Below the pieces are notes generated by a model, which ran no database searches, was not told the DNA's origin, and saw nothing but the letters and a program-made list of their open reading frames with translations. This document shows positions 12,727 through 55,443 of a stretch of 64,000 nucleotides of DNA, in pieces. The stretch lies in the sequence record NC_021531.1; one strand, 5' to 3'. Numbering within the stretch: the first letter of the stretch is position 1; the number at the start of each line of letters is the position of its first letter. Made by a program: the position numbers and the translations under genes.

Positions 12727-13080
12727 ATGGAAAAGTATTTCTTCTGCAAAGATATTGACGCGGCTGCTCCTGAGTTTGCGTCTACCGCGTACCCGACCGC
12801 AGCAGCTGCGGTCTTAAACTATCTGCTCTACTGTCACCCGACGGTTAAGCACATGTGTAAGCTGTCACGTCGGGCTGATGATAAGCCATATCAGTTGACA
12901 ACCTCTCGCCCTAATGAGAAGTTGTCGATGATGGTGTGTGAAACTGATGTCAAGGTAAGCGATGGTCAAGGTCGTGCTATTTACGGCGATGACCAGACGA
13001 TTACCAAGCCGTTAGTTGACCTGACGATTCGTGAAATCGCTGAAGCCTATCGTCTGCCGCTTATCATCGAAAGACACTAA
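12727..13080 (+). CDS. hypothetical protein
   Basis: 117-aa ORF, AAGGA SD. Confidence 0.7.
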   Translation: MEKYFFCKDIDAAAPEFASTAYPTAAAAVLNYLLYCHPTVKHMCKLSRRADDKPYQLTTSRPNEKLSMMVCETDVKVSDGQGRAIYGDDQTITKPLVDLTIREIAEAYRLPLIIERH

Positions 13081-13086
13081 AAGGTG

Positions 13087-13119
13087 CCCTATCTCGGTTT
13101 TCCGGGATAGGGATTTTTT
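13087..13119 (+). terminator. intrinsic terminator
   Basis: CCCTATCTCGG-TTTT-CCGGGATAGGG plus T tract. Confidence 0.8.
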
Positions 13120-13361
13120 GGACGAACCCGCGTCATTCCTAGAAAGTGGTTTTTTGGAGTGTTCATTTTAACTCTTATTATATGCAACTTCCCTTCACGG
13201 GGGAGGGGCCTACGGGGGAGGGGGTAATATGTATATATATGGAGATAATTTAGTAATAGTAAATTGATCTATTAATTTAATAAATAATTAGGTTATTAAC
13301 TTAGTAGATCAGATCCGTAGTAAGTAACTAAGATCGATCTAAACTTAAAAAAGAAAAGTAA
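13120..13361. other. non-coding G-quadruplex plus AT-rich GATC-rich region; candidate replication origin
   Basis: G5-A-G4-CCTAC-G5-A-G5 at 13199-13224, very AT-rich tract, five GATC in 13266-13339. Confidence 0.45.
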
Positions 13362-13389
13362 ACCTACCTACCCTAATGGGTAGGTAGGT
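13362..13389 (-). terminator. intrinsic terminator of minus-strand gene
   Basis: ACCTACCTACCC-TAAT-GGGTAGGTAGGT with A tract on plus side. Confidence 0.85.
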
Positions 13390-13391
13390 AG

Positions 13392-14453
13392 TTATGATCC
13401 GATCACTGCATTCAGCTTACTGAATACGTTCTGATCCAAAGTGAGTTTTACTGAGGAAGGTAAACGTTCAGTGAACCGTAACTGGAAGAAGTTCCTTAAC
13501 TCTCTAACCAGTGTTGGGTAGTAACGGGCCATAGCTGGGTTATCGTAGTTTACCACATACGCCATAAAGTTCAGGTTCACCAGTTGGTAGAACCAGCGCT
13601 GTTGGTTTGTACGGGAATACGATTCATCTGCCAGTAACCCTAACGCACTCGGTTTCCCATTGAAATACATGAGGAGGTGGTTCATTACCACACCGGGGAG
13701 CGGACTACCGGATAACAGTCGCTCACGGATAACCTTTGCATTACGGTCTACGAGTGGTGCGAGCATTGGGATAGGATAGTCTCTGAAGTCATCATCCTTT
13801 TCGATAGCTACACCGTTGGCCAAGAACCGATGACGGTTGAATACCGCTAAGTCCATGTACGTAGGGAGCATACGGTAAACGACATACCGCCAGAGGAAGG
13901 TCTGCAGATTTATCCCACCGTGGTTTTTGTTACGCTGGTAATATTTGTAGGCTTGGAAGTATTGCCAAACCAGAGCAACCAGATTAATTTCAATATAGCT
14001 AATACCGCGTCCACCGTTCTTCGTACCCATCTGCCAGTTCAGATTGGTGTAGTCGTGGAACAGGTAGCGGGCAGGCTGTAGTTCTCGCCACGGGGTATTC
14101 GGGTCGATGTGTTCAATAGAGATAGCGATTAACTCCGCTTGTCCCTGAATGAACTCACCTACATGGATTTCTCCAGGGTGACTGGGAGAGACTAAACGCA
14201 TGGCTGCGCCGATGTTGATGAACTTACGTCGGCACGCCCAGTATATGTCGTCGTACGTGGCGTCGGGTTGAAAGCCGATAGCCGAGAGGATACGCACCAG
14301 TAGGTGTTCGGATTTCACTCGGTTCTGCAGGCCCTCTACACGGTTACGAATACGTCTCTGATTATTTTTTACAACAGATGCAATAGTTATGGACGTAGGG
14401 TCAACGTTATGTGACTTTATGATGCTCTGCTGGATATCCGCGTTACTGAACAT
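13392..14453 (-). CDS. conserved phiKZ-like virion/head protein divergent from chimallin
   Basis: 353-aa ORF, AGGAG SD, AGTATG late-type motif upstream; product from synteny. Confidence 0.6.
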   Translation of the reverse strand: MFSNADIQQSIIKSHNVDPTSITIASVVKNNQRRIRNRVEGLQNRVKSEHLLVRILSAIGFQPDATYDDIYWACRRKFINIGAAMRLVSPSHPGEIHVGEFIQGQAELIAISIEHIDPNTPWRELQPARYLFHDYTNLNWQMGTKNGGRGISYIEINLVALVWQYFQAYKYYQRNKNHGGINLQTFLWRYVVYRMLPTYMDLAVFNRHRFLANGVAIEKDDDFRDYPIPMLAPLVDRNAKVIRERLLSGSPLPGVVMNHLLMYFNGKPSALGLLADESYSRTNQQRWFYQLVNLNFMAYVVNYDNPAMARYYPTLVRELRNFFQLRFTERLPSSVKLTLDQNVFSKLNAVIGS

Positions 14454-14500: not shown

Positions 14501-14529
14501 AAAAATTACAGATAGATTTTATTGTATTG
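14501..14529 (+). promoter_or_regulatory. putative middle-type promoter upstream of chimallin
   Basis: AAAAATTACA-N12-TGTATTG; resembles phiKZ middle motif AAanntTAC. Confidence 0.5.
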
Positions 14530-34219: not shown

Positions 34220-34840
34220 ATGTCTCGTCGTAAAAAGAAACCGTCCTATAATCCGCGCTCTGGCGGTCGTAAAGAGATCTTCGGTGCGGTACAAAACATC
34301 CTGCGCTGCGAAGACAAGTGGAAAGACCACGCCGAGCGTGTAGGTCTCATGATTGAGCAAGAGCGCGAAGCTGTTGCTAAACTGGAAGACGAACAGAAAA
34401 AAGCGATCGCTGAACCGGCACTGGAACGTATGTACGCCGCTTTTGTTGGCTGGTTGGACCATTACAACAAAGTGTACGCTGACGCCAGTGTGCGCGCTGA
34501 CCAAATCGGTACAACCGCGCTGGAAATGGTGAACACCAAAGACGTTAAGTGGAAAGACATTGAGCTGATGCTTATTGAACCGACCGCTTCACTGGCGGAA
34601 CTGGATGCAGAAATGACCAACATGCTGCTGACCGCTACCTCTTCTATTCTTCCTGCGATTGCTGAATACCAGCTGAAAACTGGCGACGGTAAAGACAATG
34701 CCGACATCGCCGCGGTGCTGGAAGCTATTCAGGCCAACGCAGCACCTCTTCCGGAGCCGGCCTTCGAAGCTGTTGACGAAGACACCACCCGTGAAGATCG
34801 CGCCGAAGACGCGTTCGAGCGCGCATCCGCCCAGTCTTAA
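34220..34840 (+). CDS. hypothetical protein, basic N-terminus
   Basis: 206-aa ORF, AAGGA SD, high-expression codon usage. Confidence 0.8.
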   Translation: MSRRKKKPSYNPRSGGRKEIFGAVQNILRCEDKWKDHAERVGLMIEQEREAVAKLEDEQKKAIAEPALERMYAAFVGWLDHYNKVYADASVRADQIGTTALEMVNTKDVKWKDIELMLIEPTASLAELDAEMTNMLLTATSSILPAIAEYQLKTGDGKDNADIAAVLEAIQANAAPLPEPAFEAVDEDTTREDRAEDAFERASAQS

Positions 34841-34860
34841 TCTGTAGGGGTATCTGACCA

Positions 34861-37023
34861 ATGAGTCAAGAAACTGAAAACCAAGGTCGCCCATTTATGG
34901 GTGGCCCTGCTCACCATGTGGACGAAGCACTGCCGTCCGCTGAAGACCATGGCTTCAAAAAGATTGATGAAGAGGATTACGATCCGGAAGCCGCCCGTAA
35001 ACTGTGGTTAGAAACACGTGAGCGTGAGCGCAAAGCCGCACTGGAGGCAGGGAATGGTGGTGAAAGTGGCAATAGTGGGGGGCATGCCTCTCCGACTGCG
35101 CGCGTTATCAATCCAAGCGCTCCTGCTGGCGGGCGTGCAGATAGCGAGCGAGCAGGAAGTGGAACAGGACAGGAAGTCGAGACAGCCGTTCACCGACACG
35201 TCGATCCTACCCCTGTGCAAATCCCTGTTCAGCAGCCCGTGGAACGGCAAGTTTCCACAGCACCCGCCGCACGAGCTGCATCCGAAGCAGTTCCACACGT
35301 TGACGCTGCCCCGGCACAGCCGCAGCATGCGCCGACCCAAACGCAGGAAGTGACGCATGGCATCAAGCAAGAAACCACGCAAGCGCAAGGCGCGGAAAGC
35401 GTTTTACAACGACCAGCGTCTGGCGGACAGGAACGAGGACATGTCCAACAACCTGTCTCGCCAGTCAGCCCAGCTCAACAGCCAGCTGCAGATGCTGCGC
35501 CGGCCGCAGCAGCGGATGACTCAGCTACGGACAAGACGCGTCGCATAGCGTCCCTGCTGGAATCTCCGGTACCGCGTGGTGAACGTAGCGAGTTGATGAA
35601 ACTCGATGACGATGACCCGGTTGGTATGTTGTCGGGTATGGCACTGGTCGGTGGTCTGCGTAATCTGGCGCAGTCATCCAAAAGCTTCAATGCGTTCTTC
35701 CGTACGCTGGAGCGTAATCAGGAAGGTCATCCGGTCTTCCGTTCGCCGCAAGAAGAGGATATCTACAACCGCATCCTGCAGATTATGCAGATCGCGTCCC
35801 CTTCTATGCAGAACGGTAATCAGGCTCAGTCCGAAGCTGCGCTGCGTGAAGACATCCAATGGCGTCAGGAACTCGATACCGGTTCAGATGAGAAGTTCGT
35901 CATCAAGAACCATCCGAAACAAGCGCACGGTTTGATGAAGTCTATCTACCGTCGTCAGAACTCGGGTGCGCCGGTTACGGTATTCCTACCTGCGTCGGGT
36001 TTCTTTATCACGTCGAAAGCGCCGCATGAAAACGATTTCTGCGACTACGACGTGGCGCAGACCATGGATACCAATCAGGTAGGTCTGTCGACCTTCGGTA
36101 TTCTGCTGTCCGCATCGTCTGGCCTGTATCTGAAGCACATGGTTAACTTCGCCCTGAAATTCGTCGTGGATACCACGCTCGATATCGGCGACGGTGACAT
36201 GCATCAGACGCTGTATGCGAAAATCGATGAACGTGACTACTGGCTGGTTGTCATGGCATGCACCATTGCGAAATACCCAGGCGGTATTCCGTGGCTGATG
36301 TCATGTACTGAACCGCAGTGTACGTTTGAAGAAGAGCAGAAGCTGAACATCGCCCGCTGCATTCGTTACGCGAACGGGATTCTGTCGCCGACTCAGCTGG
36401 CCATCATTAACCGCCAGCGTGAAGGTGAACCGTTAACCTTCGACCAGCAGAACGAGTATCGTCGTCAGCACGTGGTTGACCCATCCTCCAAATGGGAAGA
36501 CAACGACCTGACCTTCCGCTTTGCTCACGCGTCAATTGCTCGTTATATTGACACGTCTGAAGAGTGGGTGGCGGACATTAACCAGTCCACGACCGATGCG
36601 TTGGGTAACTATGCGACAGAGCAAGAGCGTAACAGCTACATGCGTACTGCCGCAGAGACCCGTCGTCTGACTCGTTACCTGCACTTCATCGAATCCATCA
36701 CTGCGAAAGCAGAAGGTGATGATGAGCCGTACGTTGAACGCGACCCGATTAAAATCCGTGAAGCGCTGGTTGCATTGTCTTCTGACCGTGCATTCGTTTC
36801 ACGCTTTGAAGCGGCTATCGAGAAGTTCAACGAGCGCAGTCGTCTGGCCATCTTTGGCTACATGTCCCATCGCTGTCCGCAGTGTGGTGCACAGACGGGT
36901 GAGAAAGATGGCGCGTTCCGTGGTATCGTTGAGATTTCACCGGACAGACTTTTTTTCGTGCTCTCTCGAGTGGTGTACGAGATTCAGAAACTCTTAACCG
37001 ATCAATACGAAAATATTGGTTAG
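34861..37023 (+). CDS. tail/baseplate-hub assembly chaperone-like protein (phiKZ gp77-like; T4 gp26-type zinc motifs) with disordered N-terminus
   Basis: CTEPQC and CPQCG pairs, C-terminal RLFF, ~230-aa P/A/Q-rich N-terminus; function is inference. Confidence 0.6.
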   Translation: MSQETENQGRPFMGGPAHHVDEALPSAEDHGFKKIDEEDYDPEAARKLWLETRERERKAALEAGNGGESGNSGGHASPTARVINPSAPAGGRADSERAGSGTGQEVETAVHRHVDPTPVQIPVQQPVERQVSTAPAARAASEAVPHVDAAPAQPQHAPTQTQEVTHGIKQETTQAQGAESVLQRPASGGQERGHVQQPVSPVSPAQQPAADAAPAAAADDSATDKTRRIASLLESPVPRGERSELMKLDDDDPVGMLSGMALVGGLRNLAQSSKSFNAFFRTLERNQEGHPVFRSPQEEDIYNRILQIMQIASPSMQNGNQAQSEAALREDIQWRQELDTGSDEKFVIKNHPKQAHGLMKSIYRRQNSGAPVTVFLPASGFFITSKAPHENDFCDYDVAQTMDTNQVGLSTFGILLSASSGLYLKHMVNFALKFVVDTTLDIGDGDMHQTLYAKIDERDYWLVVMACTIAKYPGGIPWLMSCTEPQCTFEEEQKLNIARCIRYANGILSPTQLAIINRQREGEPLTFDQQNEYRRQHVVDPSSKWEDNDLTFRFAHASIARYIDTSEEWVADINQSTTDALGNYATEQERNSYMRTAAETRRLTRYLHFIESITAKAEGDDEPYVERDPIKIREALVALSSDRAFVSRFEAAIEKFNERSRLAIFGYMSHRCPQCGAQTGEKDGAFRGIVEISPDRLFFVLSRVVYEIQKLLTDQYENIG
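36951..36957 (+). promoter_or_regulatory. -1 ribosomal frameshift slippery site U UUU UUC
   Basis: In frame within CTT TTT TTC; the -1 frame is open 36933-37412. Confidence 0.7.
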
Positions 37024-37412
37024 ACAACGTCGGCTTAAGCCATGAAACCCTGATTAACACGCTTAAGCTTGACACCACCTCTCTGTTTAAGCGTCGCGAT
37101 CATCGGGCCGTGACCTACCAAGAAGCGTTTGACGAGCTGATGGCCTCGTACGACGCCTCCTTGGAATTAGACACGGGGCGGTTTCACGTGGGGATGTCCA
37201 GTCAGGAAGACCCACTTGCTAACTCGCTGTACCAGATATGGGTGGAGACGTTCATTCGTGAGGATGTTTTCAAGTATACCGGGATGAACCTTGACCAGTT
37301 CTTAGACCAGCCGCGTTGGAAGATTGAGATGCAGTTAAAAGCTATCAAGCGTCGCCATCAGGACGAGAACGCACTGGCCACCGAAATACAGAACAGCCTA
37401 CCGAAAGACTAA
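36957..37412 (+). CDS. -1 frameshift extension (GT-type C-terminal domain); otherwise 100-aa ORF from GTG 37110
   Basis: No stop in this frame from 36933 to 37409, no ATG before 37110, weak SD at 37110. Confidence 0.65.
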   Translation, partial: RALSSGVRDSETLNRSIRKYWLDNVGLSHETLINTLKLDTTSLFKRRDHRAVTYQEAFDELMASYDASLELDTGRFHVGMSSQEDPLANSLYQIWVETFIREDVFKYTGMNLDQFLDQPRWKIEMQLKAIKRRHQDENALATEIQNSLPKD

Positions 37413-40200: not shown

Positions 40201-40256
40201 AAAATAAAAGGCACCCTACCTTCCCTCGCGGGAAGGTAGGACCTTTATCTTTTTTT
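40201..40256. terminator. intrinsic terminator (bidirectional-type)
   Basis: CCTACCTTCCC-TCGC-GGGAAGGTAGG with A and T tracts. Confidence 0.85.
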
Positions 40257-40335
40257 GGATAGATATCATCAGGGTGACAGAACAATCCCGTCTCTGTTTG
40301 AGGTTAACACCTTACAATGGTTGAAAGGAGTGAGA

Positions 40336-40464
40336 ATGAAAAGTCCTACACCCAAGACGATACCTGTCCGCCAGCCTTCGTTGGCCGACACAATTAAACT
40401 GATGGCTAGTCTGACAGGACGACCATCACGTGTTCCCGTTTCTGCAAAATCAAAGGAGTTTTAA
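40336..40464 (+). CDS. small hypothetical protein (42 aa)
   Basis: AAGGAG SD; early-type motif at 40259-40283; hairpin downstream at 40470-40495. Confidence 0.45.
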   Translation: MKSPTPKTIPVRQPSLADTIKLMASLTGRPSRVPVSAKSKEF

Positions 40465-40523
40465 TTTAATAGGGTGGTGTTAGCGCACCACCCTACTACT
40501 CCATATAATACTTATTTTTTTGT

Positions 40524-52197: not shown

Positions 52198-52741
52198 CCC
52201 AGATTACAGTGCTGCCGTACGAGTCATTGACGATTATATGGAGAAGCTGCAAAAGAACCCGATTATGGTCCATGACGACACCGTTATCCATGGGGTTCTC
52301 GCGGCTGCTGCTGTCATTCTCCCGCGGTTTAAACTGATGTGTGTTGAATCCGTTCAACGCGTATTATATGACGACTTCAAACAGTTGGGATATACGTTCA
52401 ATGCGTTTTATAATGAAACGATTGCGTTTGTCTTAGACGGGAAGCGTCGCCAATCGGGAACAGGCAGCTACGCGTCGATAATTCAGGCGTACCTGAACGA
52501 CATTACCAGCACCGTGCATGCCGACGATTTCGGTAGCCTGGGTGCGGCGATTTTGAACTCGACGTTTGGACGCTCAGGAACGGTACGTTCAATGGGTCCG
52601 GTGAATTACTCCATCAAGCCGGACATGCGCGCATTATCTTATGCAGACCACGAATTACTGGCACAATGGATTACGCGTGTAAACGGTCTTTCCGACATGG
52701 TTACATCGTTATCTGTTTTCTTGAAGATCGCACGTCCCTAA
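52184..52741 (+). CDS. virion head protein (gp52-like)
   Basis: GGAG SD before ATG 52184; synteny. Confidence 0.6.
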   Translation: MDYNNPDYSAAVRVIDDYMEKLQKNPIMVHDDTVIHGVLAAAAVILPRFKLMCVESVQRVLYDDFKQLGYTFNAFYNETIAFVLDGKRRQSGTGSYASIIQAYLNDITSTVHADDFGSLGAAILNSTFGRSGTVRSMGPVNYSIKPDMRALSYADHELLAQWITRVNGLSDMVTSLSVFLKIARP

Positions 52742-52801
52742 GGGGGCCCCTTTCTAGGGGCGTGTAGTTTACATGGTTAACCAAAAACAGGAACCACAAA
52801 T

Positions 52802-54097
52802 ATGAACTTTATGCAAAAACGGGCAGCTCGTGAGTCTATCGAAGACGGCGCTACCGACGCAGGTATCAGCAACATCTCTACCGGCGAAGACAACCTGGAC
52901 GTCCAACTGACCGAAGTTGCTCCGCTGGATCAACAGATGGATCAGCTGGCGGGCGATGCTGAAGTCCTGGCTGCCGACACCGAGCGTACCGAAGCTGCGA
53001 TCGACAACGCTGATGAAGCGCTGGCCGCTGGCGAAGAACTGCCAGAAGAAGAACTGGCACCGGCAATCGTTGCTGGTGAGAGCATCCGTCGCCGCTGGCG
53101 TCTGGAGACCCCGCAGGTTGCTCGTGAAAGCTTCCGCCGTGGTCGTGGCCTGACTCGTTCTGCCTGCGAAGGCTGGAAAGAGAACCTGAAAAAACTGTGG
53201 CAGGCGTTCATCGAAATGGTGCGCACTGTTATCCGTAAAGCGAAAGAGCTGAAGCTGAAATATTTCAACGTCGGCAAATCTGCGGTCAAGCGTGCGAAAG
53301 CGTACGAAGAGCGCATGAAAAAGCTGGGCACCAAGAAAGAGAAAGACGAAATCTCTGGTAGCTTCGTAGACAAACTGTCTATCGAAGGCAAATTCGATCC
53401 GGAAGCGTCTGCCTCTATCGCGAAAGAAGCGACCCAGGGTAAAGCCAAAGGCGCGATCAGCAAACTGGCTGCTCAGGCTGACAAAGCTGCTGCATTCGTT
53501 GTTTCTGCTTCTGAAGGCGGCGAAACTTCCTTCTCCGATCCAGCTGGCGGTAAAGTTGAGCTGTTCGGTACTGCCGGTTCTAAACTGCGCGTGCTGCCTC
53601 AGTTCGATGACGCTACTGGCGTCGATGCGATGCAGACCATCATGGCTCTGCCGGGTAACGCCTATATCCAGTGCGCTACCAAAAAGCTCAGCACCAAAGA
53701 CGGTGAATCTACTCTGACCGTTGTTGCGTTCACCACTACTGGTGATGCGAACGATGAGAAGAACGTCCCGACTCCGGACGCGGGCAAACTGCGTGCCGCT
53801 ATCTCCAGCCTGAAAGCTGTCGGCGAAGGCTTCGAAAAAGTCCTGAAAGACTTCGATGCGTATGACCGTGAGCTGGACAAACTGGAAAAAGCTGCTGATA
53901 AAGCATCCAAAGCGTTCGATAAAGCGACCGACGAAGGTGACCGCACTCTGCTGTCTAACTCTCGTACCATCGCTGATCAGGCGGTTCGTAACTATCAGGC
54001 TCTGAACCGTGGCGTACAGCACGTTGGTCGTACTGTTATCGCTGGTCTGTCCGGTTACATCGGTGCCGGCATCGGCGCGTACGGCAACAGCAAGTAA
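52802..54097 (+). CDS. abundant inner-head/ejection protein, phiKZ gp93 family (SPN3US gp53-like)
   Basis: Acidic propeptide; multiple AxE/S sites (ARES, AGES, ARES); paralog of next gene. Confidence 0.82.
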   Translation: MNFMQKRAARESIEDGATDAGISNISTGEDNLDVQLTEVAPLDQQMDQLAGDAEVLAADTERTEAAIDNADEALAAGEELPEEELAPAIVAGESIRRRWRLETPQVARESFRRGRGLTRSACEGWKENLKKLWQAFIEMVRTVIRKAKELKLKYFNVGKSAVKRAKAYEERMKKLGTKKEKDEISGSFVDKLSIEGKFDPEASASIAKEATQGKAKGAISKLAAQADKAAAFVVSASEGGETSFSDPAGGKVELFGTAGSKLRVLPQFDDATGVDAMQTIMALPGNAYIQCATKKLSTKDGESTLTVVAFTTTGDANDEKNVPTPDAGKLRAAISSLKAVGEGFEKVLKDFDAYDRELDKLEKAADKASKAFDKATDEGDRTLLSNSRTIADQAVRNYQALNRGVQHVGRTVIAGLSGYIGAGIGAYGNSK

Positions 54098-54168
54098 TTG
54101 CTGAGCTGGTAAGATAACCGTCCAACTTCTTTAACGAGGGGCCAGGTGGCCCCTTAGAGGAATCGATA

Positions 54169-55443
54169 ATGAACTTTATGCAACAACGTGCTGCGCGCGA
54201 ATCTATCGCCGACGACATCATCCTGGTTGACGCAGTAGACCTGCCGCAGGATTCTGTTGAAGGTATTCTGTCTGACGTACAGTCTGACACCAAGCAGATC
54301 GACAGCCTCGACGCTGACGGTCAGCTGATGGCTGAAGATGGCGACGAAACCGAAGCAACTCTGGGCGTGCTGGACGAAGCTCAGGCGGCTGCTGACGGCG
54401 AAACGCCGGAAGACGGTTCTGACCCGATGGAAGTTGAAGACGACATGAGCGAAGATGCTGCGGAAGCGGTTGAAGTGGCTCAGGAGTCTATCCGTCGTCG
54501 CTGGTTCCCGCACAAAGCTTCTGTAGCGCAGGAAAGCTTCGGTGCTCGTCACCGTCGTACTGCGGTTCGTGAAAGCCTGTGGGATACCATCAAACAGTTC
54601 CTGCGTAACGCAGTTGAGTGGATCAAAGCACAGTTCCGCAAACTGAAAGACCGCTGGCTGAAATTCAGCAACAAAGGTAAATCCATCCAGAAAAAATCTA
54701 AAGCTTTCGACGCGGCTATCCGTAAACTGGGTACCAAGAAAAAAGACGAGATCTCTGGTGGCTTTATCAAACAGCTGTCTGTCGGTAAATCCTTCAAAGG
54801 TAACGACACTGCGTTCCTGAACGAGCAGCTTTCTGGCGTGATCGGCTTCCAGTCCTTCCAGGCTGGTGTGCTGGACGGCATCTCCGGTATCGTTGAGAAA
54901 GCGGCTGCAGGTACTGTAACGGCTGAGCAGGTTCGTTCTGCTATGGCAGAGCAGAGCAAAGACGCTGAGAAAGAAGTCGGCGGCAACGGTGAAGAAAGCA
55001 TCATCGGCGGCAAGTTCATCAAAGTTGAAGCATCTGAGTCTGATGCAGAGATGGCTACCATCTCCCTGATCGACGACGAAGCTGAAGCTGAATCCGAAGT
55101 TCCGACTCCGGCTATTCCGCAGATGAACAACGTCAACACCTTCTTCAACAAGCTGGGCATCGAGATCGAGAAACGCGTTAAAGCGTATCACTCTAACGAA
55201 CAGAAAGCTGAAAAATACCGTAGCGGTATTGAAAAGGTTCTGCGTAAAGTTGACAACATCAAAGTCGGCGAAGACAAAGAGCTGGAAGAAGCTGTACGTC
55301 AGCTGCGCGTAGCGGTTAACGGCGCGAACTCCTTCGTGTCCTTCACTGAGCGTGTTGCTGCACACGTGCTGGTCTCTCTGACCGCGGGTGTGAACGGCTA
55401 CCTGGCTGCAGGTATCGCTGCGTACGACAAATCCAAAAGCTAA
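54169..55443 (+). CDS. abundant inner-head/ejection protein, phiKZ gp93 family (SPN3US gp54-like)
   Basis: MNFMQ.RAARES start shared with previous gene; AQES sites; KGKSIQK / LGTKKKDEISG similarity. Confidence 0.82.
   Translation: MNFMQQRAARESIADDIILVDAVDLPQDSVEGILSDVQSDTKQIDSLDADGQLMAEDGDETEATLGVLDEAQAAADGETPEDGSDPMEVEDDMSEDAAEAVEVAQESIRRRWFPHKASVAQESFGARHRRTAVRESLWDTIKQFLRNAVEWIKAQFRKLKDRWLKFSNKGKSIQKKSKAFDAAIRKLGTKKKDEISGGFIKQLSVGKSFKGNDTAFLNEQLSGVIGFQSFQAGVLDGISGIVEKAAAGTVTAEQVRSAMAEQSKDAEKEVGGNGEESIIGGKFIKVEASESDAEMATISLIDDEAEAESEVPTPAIPQMNNVNTFFNKLGIEIEKRVKAYHSNEQKAEKYRSGIEKVLRKVDNIKVGEDKELEEAVRQLRVAVNGANSFVSFTERVAAHVLVSLTAGVNGYLAAGIAAYDKSKS

What the first reader, a model, noticed from the sequence alone, without database searches (positions are those of the whole stretch)
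13226..13361. oriC-like DNA-unwinding element with clustered GATC sites
Seen: about 135 bp that are extremely AT-rich, walled by terminators on both sides. It has five GATC sites (13266, 13307, 13312, 13332, 13336) and four TAGTA repeats. GATCTATTAATTT (13266-13278) differs at one position from the E. coli oriC left 13-mer GATCTATTTATTT as I recall it. Inference: candidate replication origin, possibly sensitive to Dam methylation. I know of no mapped origin for phiKZ-like phages.
Basis: partly seen in the sequence, partly recalled or inferred. Interest (0 to 1): 0.75.

Follow-up and report, generated by a model that had tools for sequence, protein, structure and literature searches.

The report
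AT-rich GATC island behind phage promoter
In jumbo phage CR5, the easiest-to-melt, GATC-densest stretch of the whole genome lies just downstream of a conserved late-type phage promoter; it is not an E. coli-style origin, and whether it starts replication is still untested.

Summary
The window is Cronobacter phage CR5 (Derbicusvirus), bases 1-64000. Bases 13226-13361 are 79% A+T, the least stable duplex in the 224-kb genome. GATC is six-fold depleted genome-wide (160 vs 964 expected), yet 5 sites lie here (0.19 expected) and 8 within 171 bp, the same density as E. coli oriC.

The oriC reading fails its tests:
- There is no DnaA-box cluster.
- The 12/13 match to the oriC 13-mer is at chance level.
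- GC skew does not turn here.
- CR5 has no Dam homologue.
- The island is absent outside the genus.

The island sits in a 311-bp gap between convergent genes. Directly upstream is a module: TATTATATG (a phiKZ-type late TATG promoter), a hairpin starting at +1, and a GGAG-rich tract. Ten phages from at least six genera carry this module at the same position. Their hairpins have seven different stems, with G·U pairs that form only in + strand RNA.

Derbicusvirus added three things: a second G-tract (the genome's only strong G-quadruplex motif), the AT-rich island with a hairpin kept by compensatory changes, and GATC palindromes whose number is kept while positions shift.

Best reading (0.45): a transcribed, non-coding + strand unit. 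Main rival (0.22): a transcription-primed T7/T4-type origin.

The parts
13087..13118 (+). Intrinsic terminator A of CR5_021 and the DNA-polymerase operon: an 11-bp stem plus a T-run. On the minus strand it has only a weak U-run.
   Evidence: Terminator scan. The stem is conserved in all relatives.
13176..13184 (+). TATTATATG, a late-type (phiKZ nvRNAP-like TATG) promoter motif. The predicted start of transcription is G13184.
   Evidence: phiKZ late promoters are TATG with +1 at the G (PMC4666361). The 9-mer occurs only 4 times in 224 kb, 3 of them intergenic. It sits at the same syntenic position in SNUABM11, Huxley, ChrisDB, Caitlin, Asesino and Vibrio pVp-JHP1101; SPN3US has TATAGTATG. No transcript data exist.
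13184..13209 (+). Hairpin starting at +1, pairing CUUCCCU with GGGGGAG around a UCAC loop. It is stable only as + strand RNA.
   Evidence: Energy is -13.1 kcal/mol on the + strand against -4.8 on the - strand. The two substitutions in Phobos keep the pairs (C-G to U·G, and U·G to C-G). Ten phages have a hairpin at the same place with 7 different stems and GAAA or UUCG loops.
13197..13224 (+). Two direct repeats of ACGGGGGAGGGG forming G5-A-G4-N5-G5-A-G5. This is a GGAG-rich (Shine-Dalgarno-like) purine tract and a G-quadruplex motif.
   Evidence: Direct repeat D2. It is one of two G4 motifs in the genome and the only one with tracts of 4 or more G. It is 100% conserved in CR5, EarlPhillipIV, Derbicus, SNUABM38 and Phobos. 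The second repeat differs in the ENA contig but remains G4-capable. Other genera have a single GGAG-rich tract.
13225..13242 (+). Conserved TAATATGTATATATATGG. It contains an ATG 7 nt after GGAGG, but the reading frame is only 3-12 codons long and is not conserved.
   Evidence: Alignments A2 and A4. The frame is 12 codons in CR5, 7 in the EarlPhillipIV group and 3 in Phobos, read from the alignment. The early-promoter matrix rejects it on both strands.
13226..13361 (.). The reported AT-rich island: 79% A+T, the least stable duplex of the genome, with 5 GATC sites.
   Evidence: A+T content of 76-80% is kept in all Derbicusvirus lineages while the sequence diverges. The island is absent in other genera.
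13265..13311 (+). Central inverted repeat or hairpin: 19-nt arms and a 9-nt loop. GATC sites 1 and 2 form the base of the stem.
   Evidence: Inverted repeat I1. Phobos has a hairpin at the same place with a different sequence. The alignment fold finds 6 pairs changed on both sides, most of them in this stem. The ENA lineage keeps it too.
13305..13341 (.). GATC doublets GATCAGATC (13307-13315) and GATCGATC (13332-13339). The second lies inside the palindrome AGATCGATCT. Three of the genome's nine TAGATC sites are in the island.
   Evidence: GATCGATC occurs once in the genome, and GATCNGATC only at 13307 and 13396. Relatives carry the 12-bp palindrome TAGATCGATCTA.
13345..13389 (-). Terminator B of CR5_022: a 12-bp perfect stem at 13362-13389, followed on the minus strand by the T-run that reads as the A-tract 13345-13361. 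On the plus strand there is no U-tract.
   Evidence: Terminator scan. The stem is conserved while the loop varies.
13392..13436 (-). 3' end of CR5_022, the homologue of phiKZ gp052. It carries three more GATC sites, including GATCCGATC in the last codons.
   Evidence: GATCCGATC is conserved in all five aligned phages that cover this stretch, Phobos included.

Best explanation
The 135 bp are the genus-specific, AT-rich middle of a small non-coding unit transcribed rightward on the + strand. They are not a free-standing oriC-type origin.

Anatomy (shown). After terminator A comes TATTATATG, then a hairpin starting at the G of TATG, then a GGAG-rich purine tract. This three-part module sits at the same place in at least six genera of SPN3US/Erwinia-type jumbo phages and in an unclassified Vibrio phage: behind the DNA-polymerase operon, facing the 3' end of the phiKZ-gp052 homologue. 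Derbicusvirus extended it with a second G-tract, about 130 bp of 80% A+T holding a hairpin kept by compensatory changes, and a cluster of GATC/TAGATC palindromes. The unit ends at terminator B, which works only for the opposite strand.

Mechanism (inferred).
1. The phage non-virion RNA polymerase starts at G13184.
2. The nascent RNA folds at once into the 5' hairpin, which together with the Shine-Dalgarno-like tract resembles a 5' stabiliser.
3. Transcription crosses the island.
4. It then either ends at the 13362-13389 hairpin, giving a roughly 205-nt RNA, or runs on antisense through CR5_022 towards the chimallin-like gene, which has early promoters but no TATG of its own within 110 bp.

The island is thus a transcribed leader or ncRNA body. 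The extreme meltability and the GATC number, which is kept while positions turn over, suggest a second, DNA-level role layered on top. I cannot assign that role.
For: Promoter:
- phiKZ late promoters are TATG with +1 at the G (PMC4666361).
- CR5 late and structural genes show (t/g)TATG 20-45 nt before the start codon.
- TATTATATG occurs 4 times in 224 kb. Three are intergenic, and each is followed by at least 250 nt without an annotated gene.
- The motif is conserved at the syntenic site in other genera and in a Vibrio phage whose neighbouring protein is only 28% identical.

RNA strand:
- The +1 hairpin has 7 different stems in 10 phages.
- It is more stable on the + strand in 7 of 8 cases.
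- It has G·U pairs and GAAA or UUCG loops on the + strand only.
- The 5' helix pairs in 92 of 92 cells on + against 68 of 92 on -.
- The + strand of the gap folds at z = -5.5, against -3.9 for the - strand.

Central hairpin: 6 pairs changed on both sides in Phobos, most of them in this stem.

Non-coding: there is no conserved ORF, no Rfam family and no tRNA.

Conservation: the core 13176-13242 is identical apart from 2 pair-keeping changes in five of the six aligned relatives, while flanking coding DNA is 70-80% identical.

Precedent: intergenic and 5'UTR sRNAs are common in phiKZ-like phages (PMC11512511; PMC10914365).
Against: - There are no transcript data for any Derbicusvirus, so the TSS, the 3' end and the RNA's existence are all inferred.
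- TATG is a short motif and is easy to find in AT-rich DNA.
- No U-tract terminator closes the unit on the + strand.
- An RNA role does not explain why this is the most meltable DNA in the genome, why it carries the only strong G4 motif, or why GATC density is kept in a genome purged of GATC.
- In the AT-rich part the two strands fold about equally well, so the hairpin there could act as DNA.
- The covariation rests on few independent lineages: four within the genus.
Confidence: 0.45

Rival explanations
1. Transcription-primed replication origin of the T7 / T4 oriF-oriG / ColE1 / mitochondrial LSP-CSBII type. The TATG promoter fires into the G5AG4...G5AG5 tract. The G-rich RNA and the displaced G-rich strand form a persistent R-loop or hybrid G-quadruplex. 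The adjacent, easily melted island opens for helicase loading, and the RNA 3' end primes rightward leading-strand synthesis. The GATC palindromes bind a controlling protein.
For: - A promoter points into the least stable duplex of the genome.
- The only strong G4 motif in 224 kb lies between promoter and island, on the non-template strand.
- GATC density equals that of oriC and is kept with turnover across the genus.
- The site is immediately behind the DNA polymerase operon in every genus examined, and abuts the polymerase stop codon in the Vibrio phage.
- Rightward synthesis would run in the same direction as most genes and fits the overall positive G-C skew.
- No origin of a nucleus-forming phage turned up in the literature searches.
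Against: - The island, the G4 motif and the GATC cluster are absent from other genera that keep the promoter module.
- In Phobos the island sequence and most GATC sites differ.
- There are no iterons and no identifiable initiator. The neighbouring CR5_021 gives a confident model with no known DNA-binding fold.
- There is no skew inflection.
- CR5 has no Dam, and host Dam and SeqA may not reach DNA inside a phage nucleus (inference).
- Every element of the model is a possibility read from sequence, not a measurement.
Confidence: 0.22
2. A DNA site for a GATC/TAGATC-recognising protein that is unrelated to replication initiation. One possibility is a packaging-initiation (pac) site like that of P1, with several GATC hexamers flanking an AT-rich bendable centre and sensitivity to methylation. 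Another is an operator or organising site. The genome-wide purge of GATC would keep this locus unique.
For: - Strong GATC depletion (0.71 per kb) and the island are both specific to Derbicusvirus. Sampled loci of other genera show 1.7-3 per kb and no island.
- Number rather than position of GATC is kept, as expected for clustered binding sites.
- The sites form palindromes: TAGATCGATCTA and TAGATCTA in relatives, AGATCGATCT in CR5.
- Two GATC sites persist in the last codons of CR5_022 even though synonymous codons could remove them.
Against: - The hexamer contexts are heterogeneous, not the TGATCA/G of P1.
- The terminase gene is 20 kb away across the record junction, at 216.5-218.6 kb.
- No candidate binding protein was found.
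- No terminus data exist.
- This reading does not explain the conserved promoter, hairpin and purine module.
Confidence: 0.12
3. Functionless AT-rich filler: an insertion or slippage product in a gap where selection is weak. GATC sites survive only because nothing selects against them there.
For: The island is genus-specific. Its sequence evolves faster than the flanks between CR5 and Phobos. Part of the gap is a degenerate duplicate of terminator A (D1).
Against: - Whatever purges GATC genome-wide should also act in non-coding DNA.
- The cluster recurs in all lineages, at partly different positions.
- The hairpin is kept by compensatory changes.
- A+T content of 76-80% is kept in every lineage.
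- Within the CR5 and EarlPhillipIV groups the gap is more conserved (93%) than the coding flanks (about 80%).
Confidence: 0.1
4. A minus-strand early (virion RNA polymerase) promoter at 13242-13224 (ATACATATTACC), with the island acting as its AT-rich upstream element. It would drive a C-rich sRNA ending at terminator A.
For: There is a 9/10 match to the ATATATTACC core of CR5 early promoters, with AT-rich DNA upstream in the minus sense.
Against: A matrix built from 9 CR5 early promoters recovers about 18 sites, all on the + strand, with scores of 16-34. This site scores -4.1, rank 3880, and lacks the invariant downstream GTGA box. The hairpins pair only in + strand RNA.
Confidence: 0.02

Closest known systems
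E. coli oriC: DNA-unwinding element with 13-mers plus a GATC cluster
   Same: The GATC density is identical: 11 per 232 bp in oriC against 8 per 171 bp here. There is an AT-rich segment of lowest duplex stability. One 13-mer matches at 12 of 13 positions.
   Different: There are no DnaA boxes. There is one 13-mer-like sequence instead of three in tandem, and the match is at chance level. There is no skew switch. The phage has no Dam. At 79% A+T it is far more AT-rich than oriC, which is 59%.
Transcription-activated phage and organelle origins: the T7 primary origin (phi1.1A/B promoters plus an AT-rich region), T4 oriF/oriG (middle promoter plus a downstream unwinding element, R-loop primer), ColE1 RNA II, and human mtDNA LSP-CSBII (a G5-6AG7-8 tract). 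These are cited from established knowledge.
   Same: A phage-polymerase promoter points into an AT-rich, easily melted segment. A G5AG4/G5AG5 tract on the non-template strand lies between them, closely resembling CSBII in form. The site is next to replication genes.
   Different: Nothing has been measured: no R-loop, no primer, no origin activity. The unwinding element and the G4 motif are missing in sister genera that keep the promoter module.
phiKZ late promoters (TATG, +1 G; P119L) and the intergenic or 5'UTR sRNAs of phiKZ and 201phi2-1
   Same: The TATG motif sits just before a structured 5' end. The unit is short and non-coding, lies between genes, and is conserved by position across genera (PMC4666361, PMC11512511, PMC10914365).
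   Different: The extended 9-mer TATTATATG, the obligatory +1 hairpin plus GGAG tract, and the AT/GATC island are not described in those papers. The conserved sRNA reported there lies upstream of the gp182 tail gene, which is a different locus.
P1 pac site and P1 oriR, which are GATC clusters needing Dam methylation (from established knowledge)
   Same: Several GATC-containing hexamers lie within about 160 bp around an AT-rich centre, in a phage of Enterobacterales.
   Different: The hexamers are not TGATCA/G. The site is not in or beside the terminase genes. There are no iterons or DnaA boxes as in oriR. Methylation status is unknown.
5' mRNA stabilisers: a 5'-terminal stem-loop such as that of ompA, and STAB-SD elements such as that of cryIIIA (from established knowledge)
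   Same: There is a hairpin beginning at +1, followed within 0-8 nt by a Shine-Dalgarno-like GGAG tract with no conserved ORF behind it.
   Different: No stabilised downstream message has been identified. In CR5 the next + strand gene starts 1.47 kb away, beyond an antisense gene.

Membership tests
oriC-type (DnaA-dependent) bacterial origin | Cluster of DnaA boxes (TTATCCACA-like) | tested here: not met
   Within the gap (L001 4382-4692) there is a single 2-mismatch hit, TTATCTCCA. There are no hits at 0 or 1 mismatch.
oriC-type (DnaA-dependent) bacterial origin | Tandem AT-rich 13-mers (GATCTnTTnTTTT, three copies) | tested here: not met
   There is one 12/13 match at 13266-13278, and 70 of 100 shuffles give a hit at up to 2 mismatches. 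oriC shows three GATCT-starting 13-mers in tandem; here there is one.
oriC-type (DnaA-dependent) bacterial origin | GATC cluster far above background | tested here: met
   Eight sites in 171 bp against 0.12 expected at the genome rate. The density equals that of oriC.
oriC-type (DnaA-dependent) bacterial origin | GC-skew polarity switch at the site | tested here: not met
   The cumulative skew rises through 13.2 kb and its extremes lie elsewhere. Skew follows gene orientation, so this test is weak for a phage.
oriC-type (DnaA-dependent) bacterial origin | Supports autonomous or infection-dependent replication | not testable with these tools
   Needs marker-frequency sequencing or a plasmid replication assay.
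Transcription-primed phage origin (T7 primary origin, T4 oriF/oriG) | Phage-polymerase promoter directed into the unwinding element | tested here: inconclusive
   A TATG-type motif is conserved by position in 10 phages and points into the island. No transcript start has been mapped.
Transcription-primed phage origin (T7 primary origin, T4 oriF/oriG) | AT-rich DNA-unwinding element directly downstream of the promoter | tested here: met
   It has the lowest nearest-neighbour stability in the genome at three window sizes, starting about 40 bp after the predicted start.
Transcription-primed phage origin (T7 primary origin, T4 oriF/oriG) | Persistent RNA-DNA hybrid used as primer; origin activity | not testable with these tools
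   Only the sequence potential is visible: a G4 motif on the non-template strand.
phiKZ-type late (nvRNAP) promoter | TATG with transcription starting at the G | tested here: inconclusive
   The motif is present at 13181-13184 and a conserved hairpin begins at that G. The 5' end has not been measured.
phiKZ-type early (vRNAP) promoter | Match to the CR5 early consensus cagATATAT(A/G)TTAYCnnnGTGA | tested here: not met
   The best scores in the locus are 1.6 and -4.1, against 16-34 for about 18 sites taken as real.
P1-type pac site | Repeated TGATCA/G hexamers in two groups, located in or near the terminase genes | tested here: not met
   The hexamers are TGATCT, AGATCA, AGATCC, AGATCG and CGATCT. 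The terminase large subunit lies at 216,482-218,587. Termini cannot be tested here.
Any Rfam RNA family | Score at or above the family's gathering threshold | tested here: not met
   The best hit is 17.6 bits against thresholds of 39 or more.

The most novel reading that the evidence does not exclude
The conserved module of promoter, +1 hairpin and purine tract behind the DNA-polymerase operon is the transcription-primed replication origin of this clade of phiKZ-related, probably nucleus-forming jumbo phages. Derbicusvirus reinforced it with a G-quadruplex R-loop stabiliser, a dedicated unwinding element and a GATC-palindrome control cluster, while purging GATC from the rest of the genome so that the locus stays unique.
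Probability: 0.2. Interest if true: 0.85.

Novelty: new variant of a known kind. Interest (0 to 1): 0.6.

Why it matters
My literature searches found no replication origin mapped for any phiKZ-like or nucleus-forming jumbo phage. How these phages start DNA synthesis inside a protein shell that excludes host factors is an open question.

This locus combines four genome-wide extremes within 200 bp:
- the least stable duplex
- the densest GATC cluster, in a genome purged of GATC
- the only strong G-quadruplex motif
- a 65-nt core identical, apart from two pair-keeping changes, across most sampled lineages of the genus

A promoter module conserved across genera points straight into it. That makes it a precise target, easy to test by marker-frequency sequencing and 5'-end mapping.

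Even if it is not an origin, two results stand on their own. One is the TATTATATG / +1 hairpin / GGAG module as a positionally conserved regulatory unit. The other is the pairing of genus-wide GATC avoidance with a single GATC island. I did not find either described in the papers I could read.

Tried and rejected
1. Minus-strand early promoter. A position weight matrix from 9 CR5 early promoters rejects it.

2. Small protein gene.
- There is no conserved ORF. The SD-ATG frame is 12, 7 or 3 codons long in different lineages.
- A 25-codon minus-strand frame loses its ATG in relatives.

3. Known RNA family or tRNA. None found.

4. More relatives from public collections.
- The viral-contig scan returned only Derbicus, Phobos and CR5.
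- The metagenome protein scan found nothing.
- The metagenome DNA pattern hit only unrelated sequences, six of them from high-GC organisms.
- Two extra lineages came instead from the CR5_021 homologue search: ENA contig L034 and Logan contig L035.

5. GC skew as an origin test. There is no inflection, but skew tracks gene orientation, so the test says little.

6. DnaA boxes. Absent.

7. Phage-encoded Dam. tblastn with E. coli Dam against CR5 gives nothing better than E = 3.

8. CR5_021 as a candidate site-binding protein. The model is confident (pLDDT 93), but there is no PDB fold match (best E = 0.38) and no Pfam or annotated PHROG family.

9. phiKZ transcript-start tables, to test a start at the equivalent TATG. 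No supplement is held.

10. A second 'G-run doublet plus AT-rich' locus at 223,733-223,873. It is most likely a small coding gene, since relatives annotate a CDS there.

11. One literature search was set up badly and returned nothing useful.

Full report
**Identity and setting**

The window is bases 1-64000 of Cronobacter phage CR5 (NC_021531, 223,989 bp, genus Derbicusvirus). CR5 is related to phiKZ. It carries split multisubunit RNA-polymerase genes, a divergent family-B DNA polymerase (PF20286) and a chimallin-like gene, CR5_023.

The finding lies in a 311-bp gap (13081-13391) between two convergent genes:
- CR5_021 (12727-13080, + strand) is the last gene of the DNA-polymerase operon.
- CR5_022 (13392-14453, - strand) is a homologue of phiKZ gp052.

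The chimallin-like gene follows on the + strand.

Yes.

The segment is 79% A+T. It contains the most AT-rich 100 bp of the whole genome. By nearest-neighbour energies it is the least stable duplex at 60-, 100- and 140-bp windows, about six standard deviations from the mean and clearly ahead of the runners-up.

GATC is the most depleted 4-bp palindrome in CR5, with 160 observed against 964 expected. Yet 5 sites lie in these 136 bp, where local composition predicts 0.19 (P about 2e-6). Eight lie within 171 bp, the densest cluster in the genome. That density equals E. coli oriC, which has 11 in 232 bp.

The one-mismatch resemblance to the oriC left 13-mer is factually correct but sits at chance level.

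Of the two 'walls', only the right one is a terminator, and it serves the minus strand.

**What surrounds it**

Within the CR5 and EarlPhillipIV groups the gap is 93% identical, while coding flanks are about 80% identical. Adding Phobos, an ENA metagenome contig and a Logan contig splits the gap into two parts.

The first part is a core, 13176-13242. It is identical in five of the six aligned relatives, apart from two substitutions in Phobos that both keep a base pair. In the ENA contig the second G-repeat and the TA-rich tail differ.

The second part is the AT-rich island itself. Its sequence diverges, but three properties are kept:
- A+T content stays at 76-80%.
- A central hairpin is maintained by compensatory changes. 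The alignment fold finds 6 pairs changed on both sides in Phobos, most of them in this stem.
- A GATC cluster persists.

GATC counts in and around the gap are 8 (CR5), 9 (EarlPhillipIV and Derbicus), 8 (SNUABM38), at least 5 (the ENA contig, which is truncated) and 5 (Phobos). Some positions are not homologous. The number is conserved while positions turn over.

**The conserved module**

The core begins with TATTATATG. In phiKZ, late promoters of the non-virion RNA polymerase are TATG, with transcription starting at the G (PMC4666361). CR5 late and structural genes show (t/g)TATG 20-45 nt before their start codons. Early genes show a different, long consensus, cagATATAT(A/G)TTAYCnnnGTGA.

At the same syntenic position I found the same three-part arrangement in SNUABM11 (Wellingtonvirus), Huxley, ChrisDB and Caitlin (Machinavirus), Asesino (Erskinevirus), SPN3US (Seoulvirus, variant TATAGTATG) and Vibrio phage pVp-JHP1101:
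- the TATTATATG motif
- a hairpin beginning at or near the G
- a GGAG-rich purine tract within 0-8 nt

The hairpins have seven different stem sequences. They carry GAAA or UUCG loops and G·U wobbles that pair only in + strand RNA. In 7 of 8 cases they are clearly more stable on the + strand. This is good comparative evidence that the + strand is transcribed from this point and that the 5' hairpin matters as RNA.

In those genera the gap is only 43-100 bp. There is no AT-rich island and no GATC site in it. Their sampled loci are only mildly GATC-poor, at 1.7-3 per kb against 0.71 per kb in CR5.

**What Derbicusvirus added**

- The purine tract became two ACGGGGGAGGGG repeats. The first doubles as the 3' arm of the hairpin. 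Together they form G5-A-G4-N5-G5-A-G5, one of two G-quadruplex motifs in the genome and the only one with tracts of four or more G.
- Then come TAATATGTATATATATGG, the island, an A-tract and terminator B.
- Terminator B has a U-run only on the minus strand, so + strand transcripts are not obviously stopped there.
- No ORF is conserved.
- Rfam and tRNA searches are empty.

**Tests of the oriC reading**

- There is no DnaA-box cluster.
- There are no tandem 13-mers.
- Skew shows no switch, though skew follows gene orientation here and is weak evidence.
- There is no phage Dam.
- The island is missing outside the genus.

Membership in the oriC family is therefore rejected. The neighbouring genus-specific protein CR5_021 gives a confident model with no known fold, so it neither supports nor contradicts a DNA-binding role.

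**Interpretation**

The best-supported statement is that the reported segment is the AT-rich body of a small, non-coding, + strand transcription unit. A late-type promoter launches it, and a 5' hairpin plus a Shine-Dalgarno-like tract may act as a 5' stabiliser. I put this at 0.45.

The product may be a roughly 205-nt RNA ending at the 13362-13389 hairpin. Alternatively it may be a longer transcript running antisense through CR5_022 towards the chimallin-like gene. That gene has two early promoters, at 14509 and 14586, but no TATG in its last 110 upstream bases.

This reading leaves several things unexplained: the extreme meltability, the G-quadruplex motif and the maintained GATC density. All three point to a DNA-level function.

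The most coherent rival explains all of them. It is a transcription-primed origin built like the T7 primary origin, T4 oriF/oriG, ColE1 or the mitochondrial LSP-CSBII region. Every one of its steps is inferred, and the sister genera lack the unwinding element, so I give it 0.22.

The remaining readings rank as follows:
- a GATC-palindrome protein site such as a pac site: 0.12
- neutral filler: 0.10
- a minus-strand early promoter: 0.02, rejected by the position weight matrix

**Verdict**

The 'oriC-like' label is wrong. 'Origin' is possible but unproven. The anatomy is that of a genus-specific extension of a promoter, hairpin and purine module that is conserved across genera and that I did not find described.

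I found no report of a mapped origin for nucleus-forming phages. This locus is therefore a well-defined first target for marker-frequency and 5'-end mapping experiments.

Noticed in passing
window 40201-40523 (minus strand): A second convergent gap, 323 bp long, lies directly after the stop of the other DNA-polymerase gene, CR5_045. It starts with TATTATATG and an immediate hairpin (TAGGGTGGTG...CACCACCCTA), followed by about 290 nt without an annotated gene, up to a bidirectional terminator. The roughly 275-bp insert is present in CR5 and Phobos, where Phobos has TATCATATG and annotates a 62-aa gene on the other strand. It is absent from EarlPhillipIV; the BLAST matches to Derbicus and SNUABM38 are equally short.
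   Followed up: partly
L006 39281-39570 (CR5 153281-153570, minus strand): A third intergenic TATTATATG shares the identical 13-mer TATTATATGCAAC with the locus under study. It precedes a 290-nt leader of the 69-aa gene CR5_163. The region is conserved at about 87% in the genus.
   Followed up: partly
whole CR5 genome; in the window 5278, 14509, 14586, 22532, 27784, 55508, 62898: There is a phiKZ-like early-promoter class, cagATATAT(A/G)TTAYCnnnGTGA, usually just after a terminator and T-run. About 18 sites score 16 or more and all are on the + strand. Two of them lie upstream of the chimallin-like gene CR5_023.
   Followed up: partly
whole CR5 genome; window 34276-37101 and 52726-55167: GATC (observed/expected 0.17) and CTAG (0.38) are strongly depleted genome-wide. 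The strong GATC depletion is seen in Derbicusvirus only; sampled loci of sister genera have 1.7-3 GATC per kb. Two coding patches are relatively GATC-rich: 34.3-37.1 kb, and 52.7-55.2 kb in the internal head protein genes. They may be recent acquisitions.
   Followed up: no
L008 10733-10873 (CR5 223733-223873, about 120-260 bp before window base 1 on the circular map): This is the second least stable duplex in the genome. Two AAGGGGGGAT repeats with a GATC between them are followed by 130 bp of 77% A+T containing ATGGATAA repeats, and then an early promoter. It probably holds a 31-codon ORF, because relatives annotate a CDS there. The resemblance to the studied locus (a G-run doublet followed by AT-rich DNA) is unexplained.
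   Followed up: partly
window 12727-13080 (CR5_021): A 117-aa protein found only in Derbicusvirus-like sequences. AlphaFold gives a confident model (pLDDT 93, pTM 0.85; mixed alpha/beta), but there is no significant match in the PDB and no Pfam family.
   Followed up: yes
window 13100-13158: The 3' half of terminator A with its T-run (13100-13122) is repeated 36 bp downstream at 78% identity (13136-13158). This suggests a past local duplication inside the gap.
   Followed up: no
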